64,000 nt of DNA, from NCBI GenBank assembly GCA_964106645.2, contig OZ067039.1. One strand, written 5' to 3'. The notes below the pieces were generated by a model, which searched no databases, had not been told where the DNA came from, and saw nothing but the letters and a program-made list of their open reading frames with translations. Position 1 is the first letter of the stretch, and each line of letters starts with the position of its first letter. The position numbers and the translations under genes are program-made. Positions 139 through 62,155 of the stretch are shown piece after piece. This DNA is from Podarcis pityusensis (Eukaryota).

Positions 139-180
139 TAAGGAAGGACCATAGCTCAGTGGTAGAACATTAACCTTGCA
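139..180 (+). repeat. 42-bp direct repeat: duplicated tRNA-like head of a Squam3 SINE (other copy 1001-1042)
   Basis: taaggaaggaccatagctcagtggtagaacattaaccttgca vs taaggaaggatcatagctcaatggtagaacattaaccttgca, 2 mismatches; contains the Pol III A box TAGCTCAGTGG. Confidence 0.9.
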
Positions 181-382
181 CTATTCATTATATTGAACTG
201 TAGATTTCAACAGAAGTAACTCAAAGTTCAACGAAAAAAGTAGAAGACCCAGTGGATCAGTTCATTCTCTAATCAGTTTATGCATAAGGTCCATATATGT
301 GAAAGTGTCTGTTCCACCTGTCTGTTCATAAAGTCCAGCAATCCACACGCAAGGTTGTTGCAGTTCCACAGAATCCCTTCAC

Positions 383-456
383 AGAGTCTAAGACAAGGAT
401 TTCTGGAATAGTAGCCTTGTTTCGCCGTCTTGGGCTTCATCAGTAGTACAAACTCT
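383..456 (-). ncRNA. Putative type I hammerhead ribozyme
   Basis: Minus strand: AGAGUUUGUACUA-CUGAUGA-A-GCC(CAAGAC)GGC-GAAA-CAAGG(16 nt)CCUUG-UC^UUAGACUCU. Conserved core, stems II and III and GUC cleavage triplet are present; stem I is imperfect. Confidence 0.7.
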
Positions 457-492
457 AGGTAATGCAAATAAATACAATATCGTAATCTCACA

Positions 493-892
493 GAAGGCTG
501 ATCACCGAAGAATTGATGCTTTTGAATTATGGTGCTGGAGGAGACTCTTGAGAGTCCCATGGACTGCAAGAATATCCAACGCATCCATTCTTAAGGAAAT
601 TAGCCCTGAGTGCTCACTGGAAGGACAGATCCTGAAGCTGAGGCTCCAATACTTTGGCCACCTCATGAGAAGAGAAGACTCCCTGGAAAAGACCCTGATG
701 TTGGGAAAGATTGAGGGCACTAGAAGAAGGGGATGACAGAGGACGAGATGGTTGGACAGTGTTCTCAAAGCTACAAACATGAGTCTGACCAAACTGCGGG
801 AGGCAGTGGAAGACAGGAGTGCCTGGCGTGCTCTGGTCCATGGGGTCACGAAGAGTCGGACACGACTTAACGACCAAACAACAACAACAACA
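493..892 (+). mobile_element. Bov-B (RTE clade) LINE, 5'-truncated 3' fragment
   Basis: Encodes RVPWTAR.SN.SILKEISPECSLEG..LKL.LQYFGHLMRR.DSLEKTLMLGKIEG.RRRG..WRALVHGVTKSRTRL; in-frame TGA at 734-736; (ACA)n tail; 9-bp TSD aatctcaca at 484-492 and 893-901. Confidence 0.97.
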
Positions 893-1002
893 AATCTCAC
901 ACATTTTCACAGCAAAATTAATATAAACACTGTCAACAACTGTACATACCATATATGATATCACACGACAGTGTATCTTACAGCATAATAGTAGCTGCTG
1001 TA

Positions 1003-1190
1003 AGGAAGGATCATAGCTCAATGGTAGAACATTAACCTTGCATGCAGAAGGTCCCAAGATCAATCTCCAAATACAACTGGGAGTAATCCCTTTCCTGAAA
1101 CCCTGGAGAGCCACTGCCAGTCGAGGTAGACAGCGCTGAGCAAGTTGGACCAATGACCTAACTAGGTATAAGGCACCTTCCCATGTCCCC
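1003..1190 (+). mobile_element. Squam3-type tRNA-derived SINE
   Basis: tRNA-like head (TAGCTCAATGGTAGA..TTGCATGCAGAAGGTCCC), body GAAACCCTGGAGAGCCACTGCCAGTC..GTAGACA, CR1-like tail GGTATAAGGCACCTTCCCATGTCC. Confidence 0.85.
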
Positions 1191-3760: not shown

Positions 3761-3943
3761 GAAGGGTTGTAGTTCCATGACAGAACATCTGTTTTGTGAG
3801 CAGAAAGCCTCTGGTTCAATCCCTGATATTTCCAGGCAGGACTGGGAATGTCCCATATCTCAAACCCTGGAGAAGGCAGCAAATATAGACAACAATGAGC
3901 TAAGTGAGCCAGTGGTATGATTTGGTATAAGGCAGCTTCTTAT
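3761..3943 (+). mobile_element. Squam3-type SINE, degenerate
   Basis: B box GGTTCAATCCC, AAACCCTGGAGA body, GGTATAAGGCAGCTTCTTATG tail; colinear with 1003-1190. Confidence 0.75.
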
Positions 3944-18131: not shown

Positions 18132-18266
18132 CAGGCTTAGGCAAACTCGGCCTTCCAGATGTTTTGGGACTACAACTCCCATGATCCGTAGCTAACAGGA
18201 CCAGTGGTCAGGTATGATGGGAATTGTAGTCCAAAACATCTGGAGGGCTGAGTCTGCCTATGCCTG
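18132..18266. mobile_element. Palindromic hAT MITE (URR1-like)
   Basis: TIRs CAGGCTTAGGCAAACTC / GAGTCTGCCTATGCCTG; internal arms CCAGATGTTTTGGGACTACAACTCCCAT / ATGGGAATTGTAGTCCAAAACATCTGG; 8-bp TSD gtttagtt / gtttaatt. Confidence 0.88.
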
Positions 18267-24567: not shown

Positions 24568-25123
24568 AATTCCTTCCAGTAGCACCTTAGAGACCAACTA
24601 AGTTTGTTATTGGTATGAGTTTTTGTGTGCATGCACACTTCTTCAGATACACTGAAACAGAAGTCACCAGACCCTGATATATAGTGAGAGGGTGGGGAGG
24701 GGTATTACTCAGAAGGGTGGTGGGAATGGGTGATTGGCTGATAGGTGTGGTAAACCTGTTGACGACTGTTAACGACTGCAATTGGTCTTACAGAAAAAAG
24801 CAATAGTGAGATGGCTAAAAATAGCTTTATCATGTATAATGAGATAAGAATCCAATGTCTCTGTTCAGACCAGGTCTCTCCATGGTTTTAAGTTTGGTAA
24901 TAAGTTGCAATTCAGCAACTTCTCTTTCCAGTCTATTTCTGAAATTCTTTTGTAATAAGACAGCTACTTTGAGATCTTGTATAGAATGTCCTGGGAGATT
25001 GAAGTGTTCTCCTACTGGTTTCTCTGTCTTGTGATTCCTGATGTCAGAGTTATGTCTATATATCCTTTTGGCGTAGGGTTTGTCCTGTTTGTCCAATATA
25101 GAGAGCTGAAGGGCACTGTTGGC
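24568..25123 (-). mobile_element. Penelope-like retroelement (PLE), 5'-truncated: GIY-YIG endonuclease remnant plus pseudo-LTR
   Basis: QQCPSALYIGQTGQTLRQ (1-nt frameshift) RIYRHNSDIRNHKTEKPVGEHFNLPGHSIQDLKV..LEREVAELQLITKLKT..PGLNRD; the downstream non-coding region has a hammerhead motif and the GTTGGTCTCTAAGGTGCTACTGG end. Confidence 0.93.
24613..24650 (-). ncRNA. Degenerate minimal PLE hammerhead ribozyme
   Basis: GUAU-CUGAAGA-A-GUGUG(CAUG)CACAC-AAAAA-CUC-AUAC; the expected GAAAGCUC reads AAAAACUC, so it is probably inactive. Confidence 0.75.
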
Positions 25124-41646: not shown

Positions 41647-41904
41647 CAGTATTTTTCGCTCTATAAGACGCACCAGACCATAAGATGCACCTAGTTTTTG
41701 GAGGAGGAAAAGAAGAAAAAAATATTCTGAATCCCAGAAGCCAGAACAGCAAGAGGGATCGCTGCACAGCGAAAGCAGCAATCCCTCTTGCTGTTCTGGC
41801 TTCTGGGATAGCTGCGCAGCCTGCATTCACTCCATAAGACACACACACATTTCCCCTTACTTTTTAGGAGGAAAAAAGTGAGTCTTATAGAGCAAAAAAT
41901 ACGG
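41647..41904 (-). mobile_element. Tc2/pogo-like MITE with internal hairpin, copy 2 (inverted relative to copy 1)
   Basis: TIRs CAGTATTTTTCGCTCTATAAGAC / GTCTTATAGAGCAAAAAATACGG; TA TSD; 35-bp internal stem 41731-41809. Confidence 0.92.
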
Positions 41905-62029: not shown

Positions 62030-62155
62030 CAACCTTGGGTTCCTAGATGTTGTTGGACTGCCACTCCCATCATCCCCGAATGCTGCCCCTGATGGCTATG
62101 GATGATGGGAGTAGTAGTCCAACAACGTCTAGGAACTCAAGGTTGAGAAAGGCTG
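62030..62155. mobile_element. Palindromic URR1-like hAT MITE
   Basis: Arms CAACCTTGGGTTCCTAGATGTTGTTGGACTGCCACTCCCATCATCC / GGATGATGGGAGTAGTAGTCCAACAACGTCTAGGAACTCAAGGTTG. Confidence 0.8.

What the first reader, a model, noticed from the sequence alone, without database searches (positions are those of the whole stretch)
383..456. Near-canonical type I hammerhead ribozyme in unannotated sequence
Seen: the minus strand reads 5'-AGAGUUUGUACUA CUGAUGA A GCC CAAGAC GGC GAAA CAAGG [CUACUAUUCCAGAAAU] CCUUG UC^ UUAGACUCU-3'. All core nucleotides are present (CUGAUGA, GAAA, GUC triplet; predicted cut between 392 and 391). Stem II is GCC/GGC with a 6-nt loop, stem III is 6 bp (ACAAGG/CCUUGU), and stem I is AGAGU/ACUCU plus CUA/UAG around a UUGUA bulge. 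Established: type I hammerheads use a stem I bulge to dock on loop II, an extra A after A9 is a tolerated variant, and animal hammerheads occur in Penelope pseudo-LTRs and non-coding retrozymes. Inference: unlike the minimal Penelope hammerhead at 24613-24650, which has almost no stem III, this one has a full stem III and could fold as a monomer, so it belongs to a different element family. Caveat: proximal stem I has one extra U after the cleavage site, so this copy may be impaired.
Basis: partly seen in the sequence, partly recalled or inferred. Interest (0 to 1): 0.8.

Follow-up and report, generated by a model that had tools for sequence, protein, structure and literature searches.

The report
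Hammerhead-like motif in lizard repeat
The hammerhead-ribozyme-like sequence is really there and sits in a roughly 411-base non-coding repeat present in many copies, most likely a decayed Penelope- or retrozyme-type mobile element, but nothing here shows that it cuts RNA.

Summary

The support for a working ribozyme is thin.
- No Rfam hammerhead model matches, even when only 85 bases are searched.
- The hammerhead fold is 5.4 kcal/mol worse than the minimum-energy fold.
- A motif this good arises by chance about 0.002 times per window, or roughly 0.6 times over the 336 windows with notes in this genome.

The new information is the context. The motif lies mid-way in a 411-nt, 37% GC element (minus strand 1000..902 plus 492..181). 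A later BovB LINE insertion splits the element, and a 42-bp duplication of a SINE head flanks it. Public DNA contigs show many paralogues. Where they differ from this copy, the listed differences fall in loops II and III and on the 5' side of stem I, not in the core or stems II and III. RNA reads cover the family at 30-45x with no pile-up of ends at the predicted cut.

The extra A after A9 is a published hallmark of Penelope-element hammerheads. Best reading: a relic of a non-autonomous Penelope- or retrozyme-like family, which is a known kind of element. A chance motif remains a serious rival. The scan noted the same insert on this window before (s1-725643).

The parts
383..456 (-). Hammerhead-like motif, type I topology (both ends in stem I)
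   Evidence: Sequence read. It is the only descriptor hit in the window.
437..443 (-). Core CUGAUGA (C3-A9). The AUG at 440-438 opens a 55-codon ORF with no recognisable homologue.
   Evidence: ORF. No homologue.
436..436 (-). Unpaired A between A9 and stem II
   Evidence: An unpaired base at the 5' end of stem II is described as usual for Penelope-element hammerheads in PMC4209133.
424..435 (-). Stem II GCC/GGC (3 bp) with the 6-nt loop CAAGAC. The family majority differs from this copy at 430 and 427, both in the loop.
   Evidence: table 3.
420..423 (-). Core GAAA (G12 A13 A14 A15.1)
393..420 (-). Stem III ACAAGG/CCUUGU (6 bp) with a 16-nt loop. Family variants at 404, 411 and 413 all lie in the loop.
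391..392 (-). Predicted cleavage site, after C17 (392) and before U391. It lies at position 200/201 of the 411-nt element.
   Evidence: Position inferred from the motif. No excess of RNA read ends and no dip in depth at this site (tables 2 and 6).
181..492 (-). 3' 312 nt of the repeat element. The repeat family is seen in public DNA and RNA runs.
   Evidence: 7-43 contigs per listed variant site (mostly 13-43). Summed depth is 1,900-25,000 against about 25 for single-copy contigs in X1.
902..1000 (-). 5' 99 nt of the same element, separated from the rest by the BovB insertion
   Evidence: Paralogous contigs that lack BovB run on past 492 with letters matching 902 onward (table 7, X1 '492 behind'). 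Junction geometry.
493..892 (+). 5'-truncated BovB-type LINE 3' end that inserted later. Its 9-bp target duplication AATCTCACA lies at 484-492 and 893-901.
   Evidence: Depth about 10^6. The name BovB comes from my memory of the sequence.
139..180 (+). Left copy of the 42-bp direct repeat (head of a tRNA-like SINE plus 3 nt of flank)
   Evidence: 40 of 42 positions identical to 1001-1042. Other SINE copies continue past 180 with the letters found at 1043 onward (table 7).
1001..1042 (+). Right copy of the 42-bp direct repeat. The SINE continues to about 1190.

Best explanation
The motif is part of a dispersed, non-coding, AT-rich retroelement of about 411 nt, oriented on the minus strand. The element inserted into a SINE head and was later split by a BovB insertion. 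The hammerhead-like sequence was inherited from the family's source element. It is most likely a Penelope-derived (retrozyme-type) type I hammerhead that carries a hairpin as stem III. In a source transcript it would cut after C392, leaving a 5'-OH and a 2',3'-cyclic phosphate, to process the element's RNA before reverse transcription in trans by a Penelope-like element's enzyme. This solitary, diverged copy is probably inert.

Shown here: the motif, the element's boundaries, the repeat family, the transcription of family members, and the lack of read ends at the predicted cut.

Inferred: the Penelope or retrozyme affiliation, the descent from a true ribozyme, and any cleavage.
For: - Family membership: one search gives 7-43 paralogous contigs per listed variant site in two DNA runs. 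Fewer contigs reach the minus-strand 5' side (8 continue past 492), as expected for 5'-truncated retro-copies in the same sense as the motif.
- Variant pattern: the differences listed between this copy and the family within 383-456 are at 404, 411 and 413 (loop III), 427 and 430 (loop II), and 448, 449, 452 and 454 (stem I bulge and distal 5' strand). None is listed in the core, stem II, stem III or the 3' strand of stem I.
- Element traits: 411 nt, 37% GC, non-coding, no poly(A) or microsatellite tail, and a 42-bp target duplication against 9 bp for the BovB at the same locus. Published animal retrozymes are about 170-400 nt, low in GC, and have target duplications larger than 4 bp (PMC7229834).
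- Unpaired base: the unpaired base at the 5' end of stem II is the usual Penelope-hammerhead trait (PMC4209133). The minimal motif on the minus strand near 24613-24650 also reads CUGAAGA-A before its stem II.
- Known distribution: retrozymes and their dispersed monomers, related to Penelope pLTRs, are reported in 4 of 5 reptiles sampled (bioRxiv 10.64898/2026.07.22.740005).
- Chance for this single window is 0.0019.
Against: - No Rfam hammerhead model matches at E<=10, even in an 85-nt search.
- Over the windows with notes in this genome, about 0.6 chance motifs of this quality are expected.
- Stem II has only 3 bp and stem I is irregular. The hammerhead fold is 5.4 kcal/mol above the minimum-energy fold.
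- The variant evidence is incomplete. One search left 54 variant sites unlisted. The listed variants at 452 and 454 break distal stem I pairs, and no partner change is listed.
- RNA reads at 30-45x show no ends and no dip at 391/392.
- No sequence link to any Penelope ORF or pLTR was obtained.
- A 42-bp target duplication is not a documented Penelope trait; 8-10 bp is reported in rotifers (PMC3846280).
- Published vertebrate retrozyme hammerheads have a very short helix III and occur in tandem copies, unlike this one.
Confidence: 0.5

Rival explanations
1. Chance motif. The repeat family is an ordinary non-coding interspersed repeat, and its sequence happens to match the short hammerhead core with three weak helices. 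It never functioned as a ribozyme.
For: The expected chance rate is 0.0019 per window, about 0.6 over the 336 windows with notes in this genome, and the first-stage readers looked for this motif (62 hammerhead notes). No Rfam hammerhead hit. Fold z-score -0.36 and an alternative stem I register favoured by 5.4 kcal/mol. Stem II has only 3 bp. No compensatory changes, and variants 452 and 454 break distal stem I. No RNA ends at the predicted cut.
Against: The motif lies in the sense orientation of a retroelement-like family. It carries the unpaired base typical of Penelope hammerheads together with G10.1-C11.1, U7 and C17, the commonest natural choices (the last point is from my memory). The listed family variants avoid the core and stems II and III. 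At the listed variant density of about 0.115 per site, about 4.6 variants would be expected in those 40 positions, and the probability of none is roughly 0.01, subject to the unlisted sites. Animal type I hammerheads are known to sit in exactly this kind of element.
Confidence: 0.33
2. Efficient monomeric ribozyme. The family carries a type I hammerhead whose stable 6-bp helix III lets it cleave as a single unit, unlike the dimer-dependent hammerheads of other vertebrate Penelope elements and retrozymes.
For: The core is complete and stem III is predicted in the minimum-energy fold. Fungal and protist Penelope elements have large-helix-III hammerheads that work as monomers (PMC4209133). The short stem II (3 bp) and short proximal stem I (3 bp) are at least matched in length, which could let loop II meet the stem I bulge (my inference).
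Against: RNA reads show no dip in depth and no pile of ends at 391/392 at 30-45x. Stem I is irregular next to the cut in most of the family. Stem II has 3 bp. The hammerhead fold is not the favoured fold. No covariance-model support.
Confidence: 0.12

Closest known systems
Hammerheads of Penelope-like elements (min-HHRs; Cervera and de la Pena 2014, PMC4209133; Poseidon of Anolis, PMC11167929)
   Same: Type I topology. Unpaired base at the 5' end of stem II. Short and poorly defined stem I. Location inside a 5'-truncated, non-polyadenylated retroelement, about 200 nt from its 3' end. An AUG within or next to the core. No RNA-seq ends at the cut site, as was also reported for the experimentally active Poseidon hammerhead.
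   Different: Published metazoan examples have a long stem II (6-8 bp) and almost no stem III. This motif has a 3-bp stem II and a 6-bp stem III with a 16-nt loop. No RT/GIY-YIG ORF, pLTR pair or 30-40-bp tail was identified, and the ORF after the AUG has no Penelope homologue.
Animal non-LTR retrozymes and their dispersed monomers (PMC7229834; bioRxiv 10.64898/2026.07.22.740005)
   Same: Non-coding, low GC (37%), and a unit just above the reported 170-400 nt RNA size and inside the 51-972 bp range of family consensus lengths. Target duplication longer than 4 bp. Type I motif. Family members are transcribed. Such elements are reported in reptiles, and monomers are dispersed along chromosomes.
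   Different: Retrozymes are defined by tandem copies, each with a hammerhead, that release circular RNAs. Only one unit and one motif are present here, and no circular RNA evidence was obtained. Vertebrate retrozyme hammerheads have 1-2 bp in helix III.
Large-helix-III type I hammerheads of fungal and protist Penelope elements (PMC4209133)
   Same: Stable helix III. Helices I and II of irregular size with no recognisable loop-loop contacts. Possible action as a monomer.
   Different: Those sit in endonuclease-deficient, telomere-associated elements of fungi and protists and have measured activity. This one is in an animal genome and is untested.
Rfam Hammerhead_1 (RF00163) and the other Rfam hammerhead models
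   Same: The conserved core letters and the order of the helices.
   Different: No match at E<=10 in any of four scans.

Membership tests
Hammerhead ribozyme, type I | Conserved core: C3 U4 G5 A6 N7 G8 A9, G12 A13 A14, A15.1-U16.1, and H17 that is not G | tested here: met
   All are present, with one extra A between A9 and G10.1.
Hammerhead ribozyme, type I | Three helices around the core, with stem I pairing from positions 1.1-2.1 | tested here: inconclusive
   Stems II (3 bp) and III (6 bp) form in the minimum-energy fold. Stem I next to the cut needs an unpaired U or two mismatches. The favoured fold uses a register shifted by 5 nt, at -15.1 against -9.7 kcal/mol.
Hammerhead ribozyme, type I | Match to a curated covariance model (Rfam RF00163 and relatives) | tested here: not met
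   No hammerhead family at gathering score or at E<=10 in searches of 64 kb, 351 nt and 85 nt.
Hammerhead ribozyme, type I | Helices supported by covariation among relatives | tested here: inconclusive
   Only the variant table was available. Listed variants avoid stems II and III, none is compensatory, two break distal stem I, and 54 sites were not listed. Paralogue sequences themselves could not be fetched.
Hammerhead ribozyme, type I | Mg2+-dependent self-cleavage 3' of H17 | not testable with these tools
   The only indirect evidence is the lack of excess RNA read ends and of any dip in depth at 391/392 at 30-45x. The same was reported for an active Penelope hammerhead (PMC11167929).
Penelope-like element or non-autonomous derivative | Sequence relation to a Penelope pLTR or ORF (RT plus GIY-YIG) | tested here: not met
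   The 55-aa ORF that starts in the core has no Penelope homologue among 1.84 billion representative proteins and no Pfam domain. No repeat library was available for a DNA comparison, so the pLTR relation remains untested.
Penelope-like element or non-autonomous derivative | 5'-truncated insertions without a poly(A) tail, with a hammerhead near the 3' end | tested here: met
   Contig counts fall toward the minus-strand 5' side. The 3' end has no A-rich or microsatellite tail. The predicted cut site is 211 nt from the 3' end.
Animal non-LTR retrozyme | Tandem units, each with a type I hammerhead, giving unit-length linear and circular RNA | tested here: not met
   There is a single unit and a single motif in 64 kb. 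No RNA joints were seen. At most this is a dispersed monomer of such a family.
Animal non-LTR retrozyme | Short, non-coding, low-GC unit with a target duplication larger than 4 bp | tested here: met
   411 nt, 37% GC, and a 42-bp duplication with 40 of 42 positions identical.

The most novel reading that the evidence does not exclude
A squamate family of dispersed 411-nt non-autonomous elements carries a type I hammerhead with a stable helix III and a 3-bp helix II that cleaves efficiently as a monomer. It would be a vertebrate counterpart of the monomer-competent hammerheads of fungal and protist Penelope elements, and it would integrate with unusually long (about 42-bp) target duplications.
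Probability: 0.12. Interest if true: 0.5.

Novelty: new member of a known kind. Interest (0 to 1): 0.27.

Why it matters
If the motif descends from a true ribozyme, it adds a lizard family to the known link between type I hammerheads and Penelope- or retrozyme-type elements. Its helix arrangement (long helix III, short helix II) has not been described for vertebrate members. That would bear on whether vertebrate elements always need two ribozyme copies to cut. If it is a chance match, the case is a useful calibration. A full hammerhead core with three short helices turns up about once per 500 windows of this composition, so such motifs need family-level or biochemical support before they are called ribozymes.

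Tried and rejected
- Rfam scans at gathering and at E<=10 on 64 kb, 351 nt and 85 nt gave no hammerhead hit.
- Looking for paralogues inside the window by blastn with short words found none.
- Exact-pattern scans of the metagenome and viral contig collections with the core-stem II-GAAAC stretch gave 0 hits. These collections probably hold little or no lizard DNA, so the result says little.
- The search of earlier findings by sequence came back blank.
- I tested whether the AUG inside CUGAUGA opens a Penelope ORF, as it does in Poseidon of Anolis. The 55-aa product has one spurious hit to a Cys-patterned repeat protein (E 7e-4) and no Pfam domain. I rejected that idea. The blank also shows that the protein collections hold no ORFs called on paralogous copies, so I did not try to fetch paralogue DNA through protein look-ups.
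- I first took the 42-bp duplication for a Penelope hallmark from memory. The papers I could read give 30-40 bp for the element's 'tail' and 8-10 bp or no target duplication in rotifer elements. I therefore do not use it as evidence for Penelope, and it remains unexplained.
- Solo LTR is rejected: no TG..CA ends and the wrong duplication size. MITE or DNA transposon is rejected: no terminal inverted repeats.
- A BovB-mobilised SINE is unlikely. There is no microsatellite tail, and the duplication is 42 bp against 9 bp for the BovB at the same locus.
- I built no family consensus. Only the positions where other copies differ are described.

Full report
**1. Observation**

It has a 13-nt 5' strand of stem I, then CUGAUGA and one extra A. 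Next come GCC, the loop CAAGAC and GGC, then GAAA. CAAGG, a 16-nt loop and CCUUG follow, and the motif ends with UC and UUAGACUCU.

I wrote an independent type I descriptor. It required CUGANGA, a 0-1 nt insert, stem II of at least 3 bp, GAAA, stem III of at least 3 bp closed by A15.1-U16.1, and H17. It finds this site and no other on either strand of the window.

**2. Is it more than chance?**

In 5260 dinucleotide-preserving shuffles of the window, the loose motif appears 0.15 times per window. A motif as good as the observed one appears 0.0019 times per window. "As good" means stem III of at least 6 bp and at least 3 contiguous proximal stem I pairs, allowing one unpaired base.

That is rare for one window. 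However, notes exist for 336 windows of this genome, and 62 of the scan's notes mention hammerheads. About 0.6 chance hits of this quality are therefore expected in the part of the genome already read. The motif alone cannot carry the claim.

**3. Tests of the motif as a ribozyme**

- No Rfam hammerhead family is matched at gathering score.
- None is matched at E<=10 in the whole window, in 250-600, or in 378-462, where the search space is only 85 bases.
That leaves five extra unpaired bases in front of C3.
- The fold is no more stable than shuffles (-15.1 kcal/mol, z = -0.36).
- Stem II has only three pairs.
- Next to the cut, stem I needs either an unpaired U or two mismatches.

**4. Context**

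On the plus strand, 493-892 is the 3' part of a very abundant LINE. Summed contig depth there is about 10^6. I recognise the sequence as BovB from memory. It ends in (CAA)n and is flanked by the 9-bp duplication AATCTCACA at 484-492 and 893-901.

With that later insertion removed, one sequence remains: minus strand 1000..902 joined to 492..181. It is 411 nt long and 37% GC. It has no internal repeats, no terminal inverted repeats and no A-rich tail.

Paralogous contigs that lack the BovB run straight across this junction. Their letters after 492 match 902 onward (table 7).

The 411-nt sequence is bracketed by a 42-bp direct repeat at 139-180 and 1001-1042, with 40 of 42 positions identical. 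The repeat consists of the head of a tRNA-like SINE plus about 3 nt of its flank. Other copies of the SINE continue past 180 with the letters found at 1043 onward (table 7). The element therefore inserted into a SINE and duplicated 42 bp of its target.

The predicted cut lies at position 200/201 of the 411 nt.

**5. The element is a repeat family**

I laid two DNA runs (Logan contigs) and two RNA runs (raw reads) on 130-620 at 80% likeness.

- Region 181-486 collects 7-43 distinct contigs per listed variant site, mostly 13-43.
- Summed depth there is 1,900-25,000. Single-copy contigs in X1 have a depth of about 25.
- Only 8 contigs continue beyond 492. This fits 5'-truncated retro-copies oriented on the minus strand, the sense of the motif.
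- The window holds no second copy.

**6. What the paralogues say about the motif**

Within 383-456, one search lists these sites where other copies differ from this one:

| Site (plus strand) | Location in the motif | Share of other copies that differ |
|---|---|---|
| 430 | loop II | nearly all |
| 411 | loop III | nearly all |
| 404 | loop III | about 70% |
| 427 | loop II | about 60% |
| 413 | loop III | minority |
| 448, 449 | stem I bulge | minority |
| 452, 454 | distal stem I, 5' strand | minority |

- No base change is listed in the core, in stem II, in stem III or in the 3' strand of stem I.
- The listed variant density is about 0.115 per site. About 4.6 variants would then be expected in those 40 positions, and the probability of none is about 0.01.
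- Three cautions apply. The tool left 54 variant sites unlisted. The motif as a whole is no better conserved than its flanks, with about 12 variant sites per 100 nt inside it and 10-11 outside. The variants at 452 and 454 break proposed distal stem I pairs, and no partner change is listed.
- No compensatory change was seen. The evidence for selection on the fold is suggestive at best.
- No base change is listed at 383-391. The only differences there are minority indels in RNA reads: an extra base behind 389 (9 of 40 reads in X23) and a 6-base deletion at 384 (4 of 25 in X24). The irregular stem I next to the cut is therefore shared by most of the family and is not private damage to this copy.

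**7. RNA**

Family members are transcribed, at 30-45 reads deep in two bulk RNA-seq runs of organism H, in both read orientations.

Depth is flat across 391/392, and the tool reports no place where molecules begin or end. This argues against efficient cleavage in those samples, but it is not decisive. The libraries may be unstranded. Many reads may come from host introns in either sense. The experimentally active Poseidon hammerhead of Anolis likewise showed no RNA-seq ends at its cut and needed its own protein to cleave in vitro (PMC11167929).

**8. Comparison with what is known**

- Metazoan Penelope-element hammerheads are type I. They have an unpaired base at the 5' end of stem II, a short and poorly defined stem I, a long stem II and almost no stem III (PMC4209133).
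- The extra A here is that hallmark. The minimal motif on the minus strand near 24613-24650 of this window also reads CUGAAGA-A before its stem II.
- The long stem III and 3-bp stem II depart from the metazoan pattern. They resemble the monomer-competent variants of fungal and protist Penelope elements described in the same paper.
- Animal non-LTR retrozymes are RNAs of about 170-400 nt from low-GC, non-coding repeats, with target duplications larger than 4 bp (PMC7229834).
- Retrozymes occur in 4 of 5 reptiles sampled, leave dispersed monomers, and are related to Penelope pLTRs (bioRxiv 10.64898/2026.07.22.740005).
- The element here fits that description as a solitary monomer. It has no tandem partner.
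- I could show no sequence link to a Penelope element. The 55-codon ORF that starts at the AUG inside CUGAUGA has no Penelope homologue and no Pfam domain.
- A 42-bp target duplication is not a documented Penelope trait. The literature gives 8-10 bp or none in rotifer elements, and 30-40 bp for the element's own 'tail'.

**9. Verdict**

| Reading | Probability |
|---|---|
| Relic copy of a non-autonomous Penelope- or retrozyme-like family whose hammerhead-like motif descends from a real ribozyme; this copy probably inert | about 0.5 |
| Chance motif frozen in an ordinary repeat | about 0.33 |
| Efficient monomeric ribozyme with a stable helix III, the most novel reading still open | about 0.12 |

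Even the favourable readings make this a new member of a known kind. The decisive steps are a family alignment from the assembly, a comparison with a repeat library, and a cleavage assay. None of these could be run here.

**10. Limits**

- Run and organism names were coded, so I do not name the species. A squamate origin is inferred from the BovB and tRNA-type SINE content and from the mir-5408-like hairpins.
- Both read tools were used once each, as allowed.

Noticed in passing
window 139-180 and 1001-1042: A 42-bp target duplication (40 of 42 identical) flanks the 411-nt element. That is far longer than the 9-bp duplication of the BovB at the same locus and longer than the 8-10 bp reported for rotifer Penelope elements. 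The integration mechanism it implies is unexplained.
   Followed up: partly
window 24613-24650, minus strand: The minimal Penelope-type motif reads GUAU-CUGAAGA-A-GUGUGCAUGCACAC and is then followed by AAAAAC-UC. The position where G12 is expected appears to be A, so this copy may be catalytically dead. No Rfam hammerhead hit here either.
   Followed up: partly
window 18157-18241 and 62046-62129: Hairpins of about 84 nt match the Anolis mir-5408 precursor model on both strands at about half its gathering score (41-48 bits against 90). They look like palindromic MITE-type repeats and not bona fide miRNA genes.
   Followed up: no
window 41732-41808: A long inverted repeat with a 7-nt loop (about 35 paired positions per arm in the alignment shown) was picked up as a sub-threshold MIR2646 match (42.5 bits against 245).
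   Followed up: no
window 3763-3834: A tRNA-like sequence reaches the Rfam tRNA gathering score (37.7 bits) but has several mismatched acceptor-stem pairs. It is probably a SINE head or a tRNA pseudogene.
   Followed up: no
window 440-486 (run X24): One expressed subfamily or locus carries linked variants at 448, 449, 452, 454, 458, 465, 482 and 484. Three of them (454, 465 and 482) are seen only in reads whose first mate lies on the plus strand; the others also occur in the opposite orientation. The variant-bearing reads make up about 20-24 of 22-29 first-mate-plus reads, which suggests a strand-specific transcript of one family member in that tissue.
   Followed up: no
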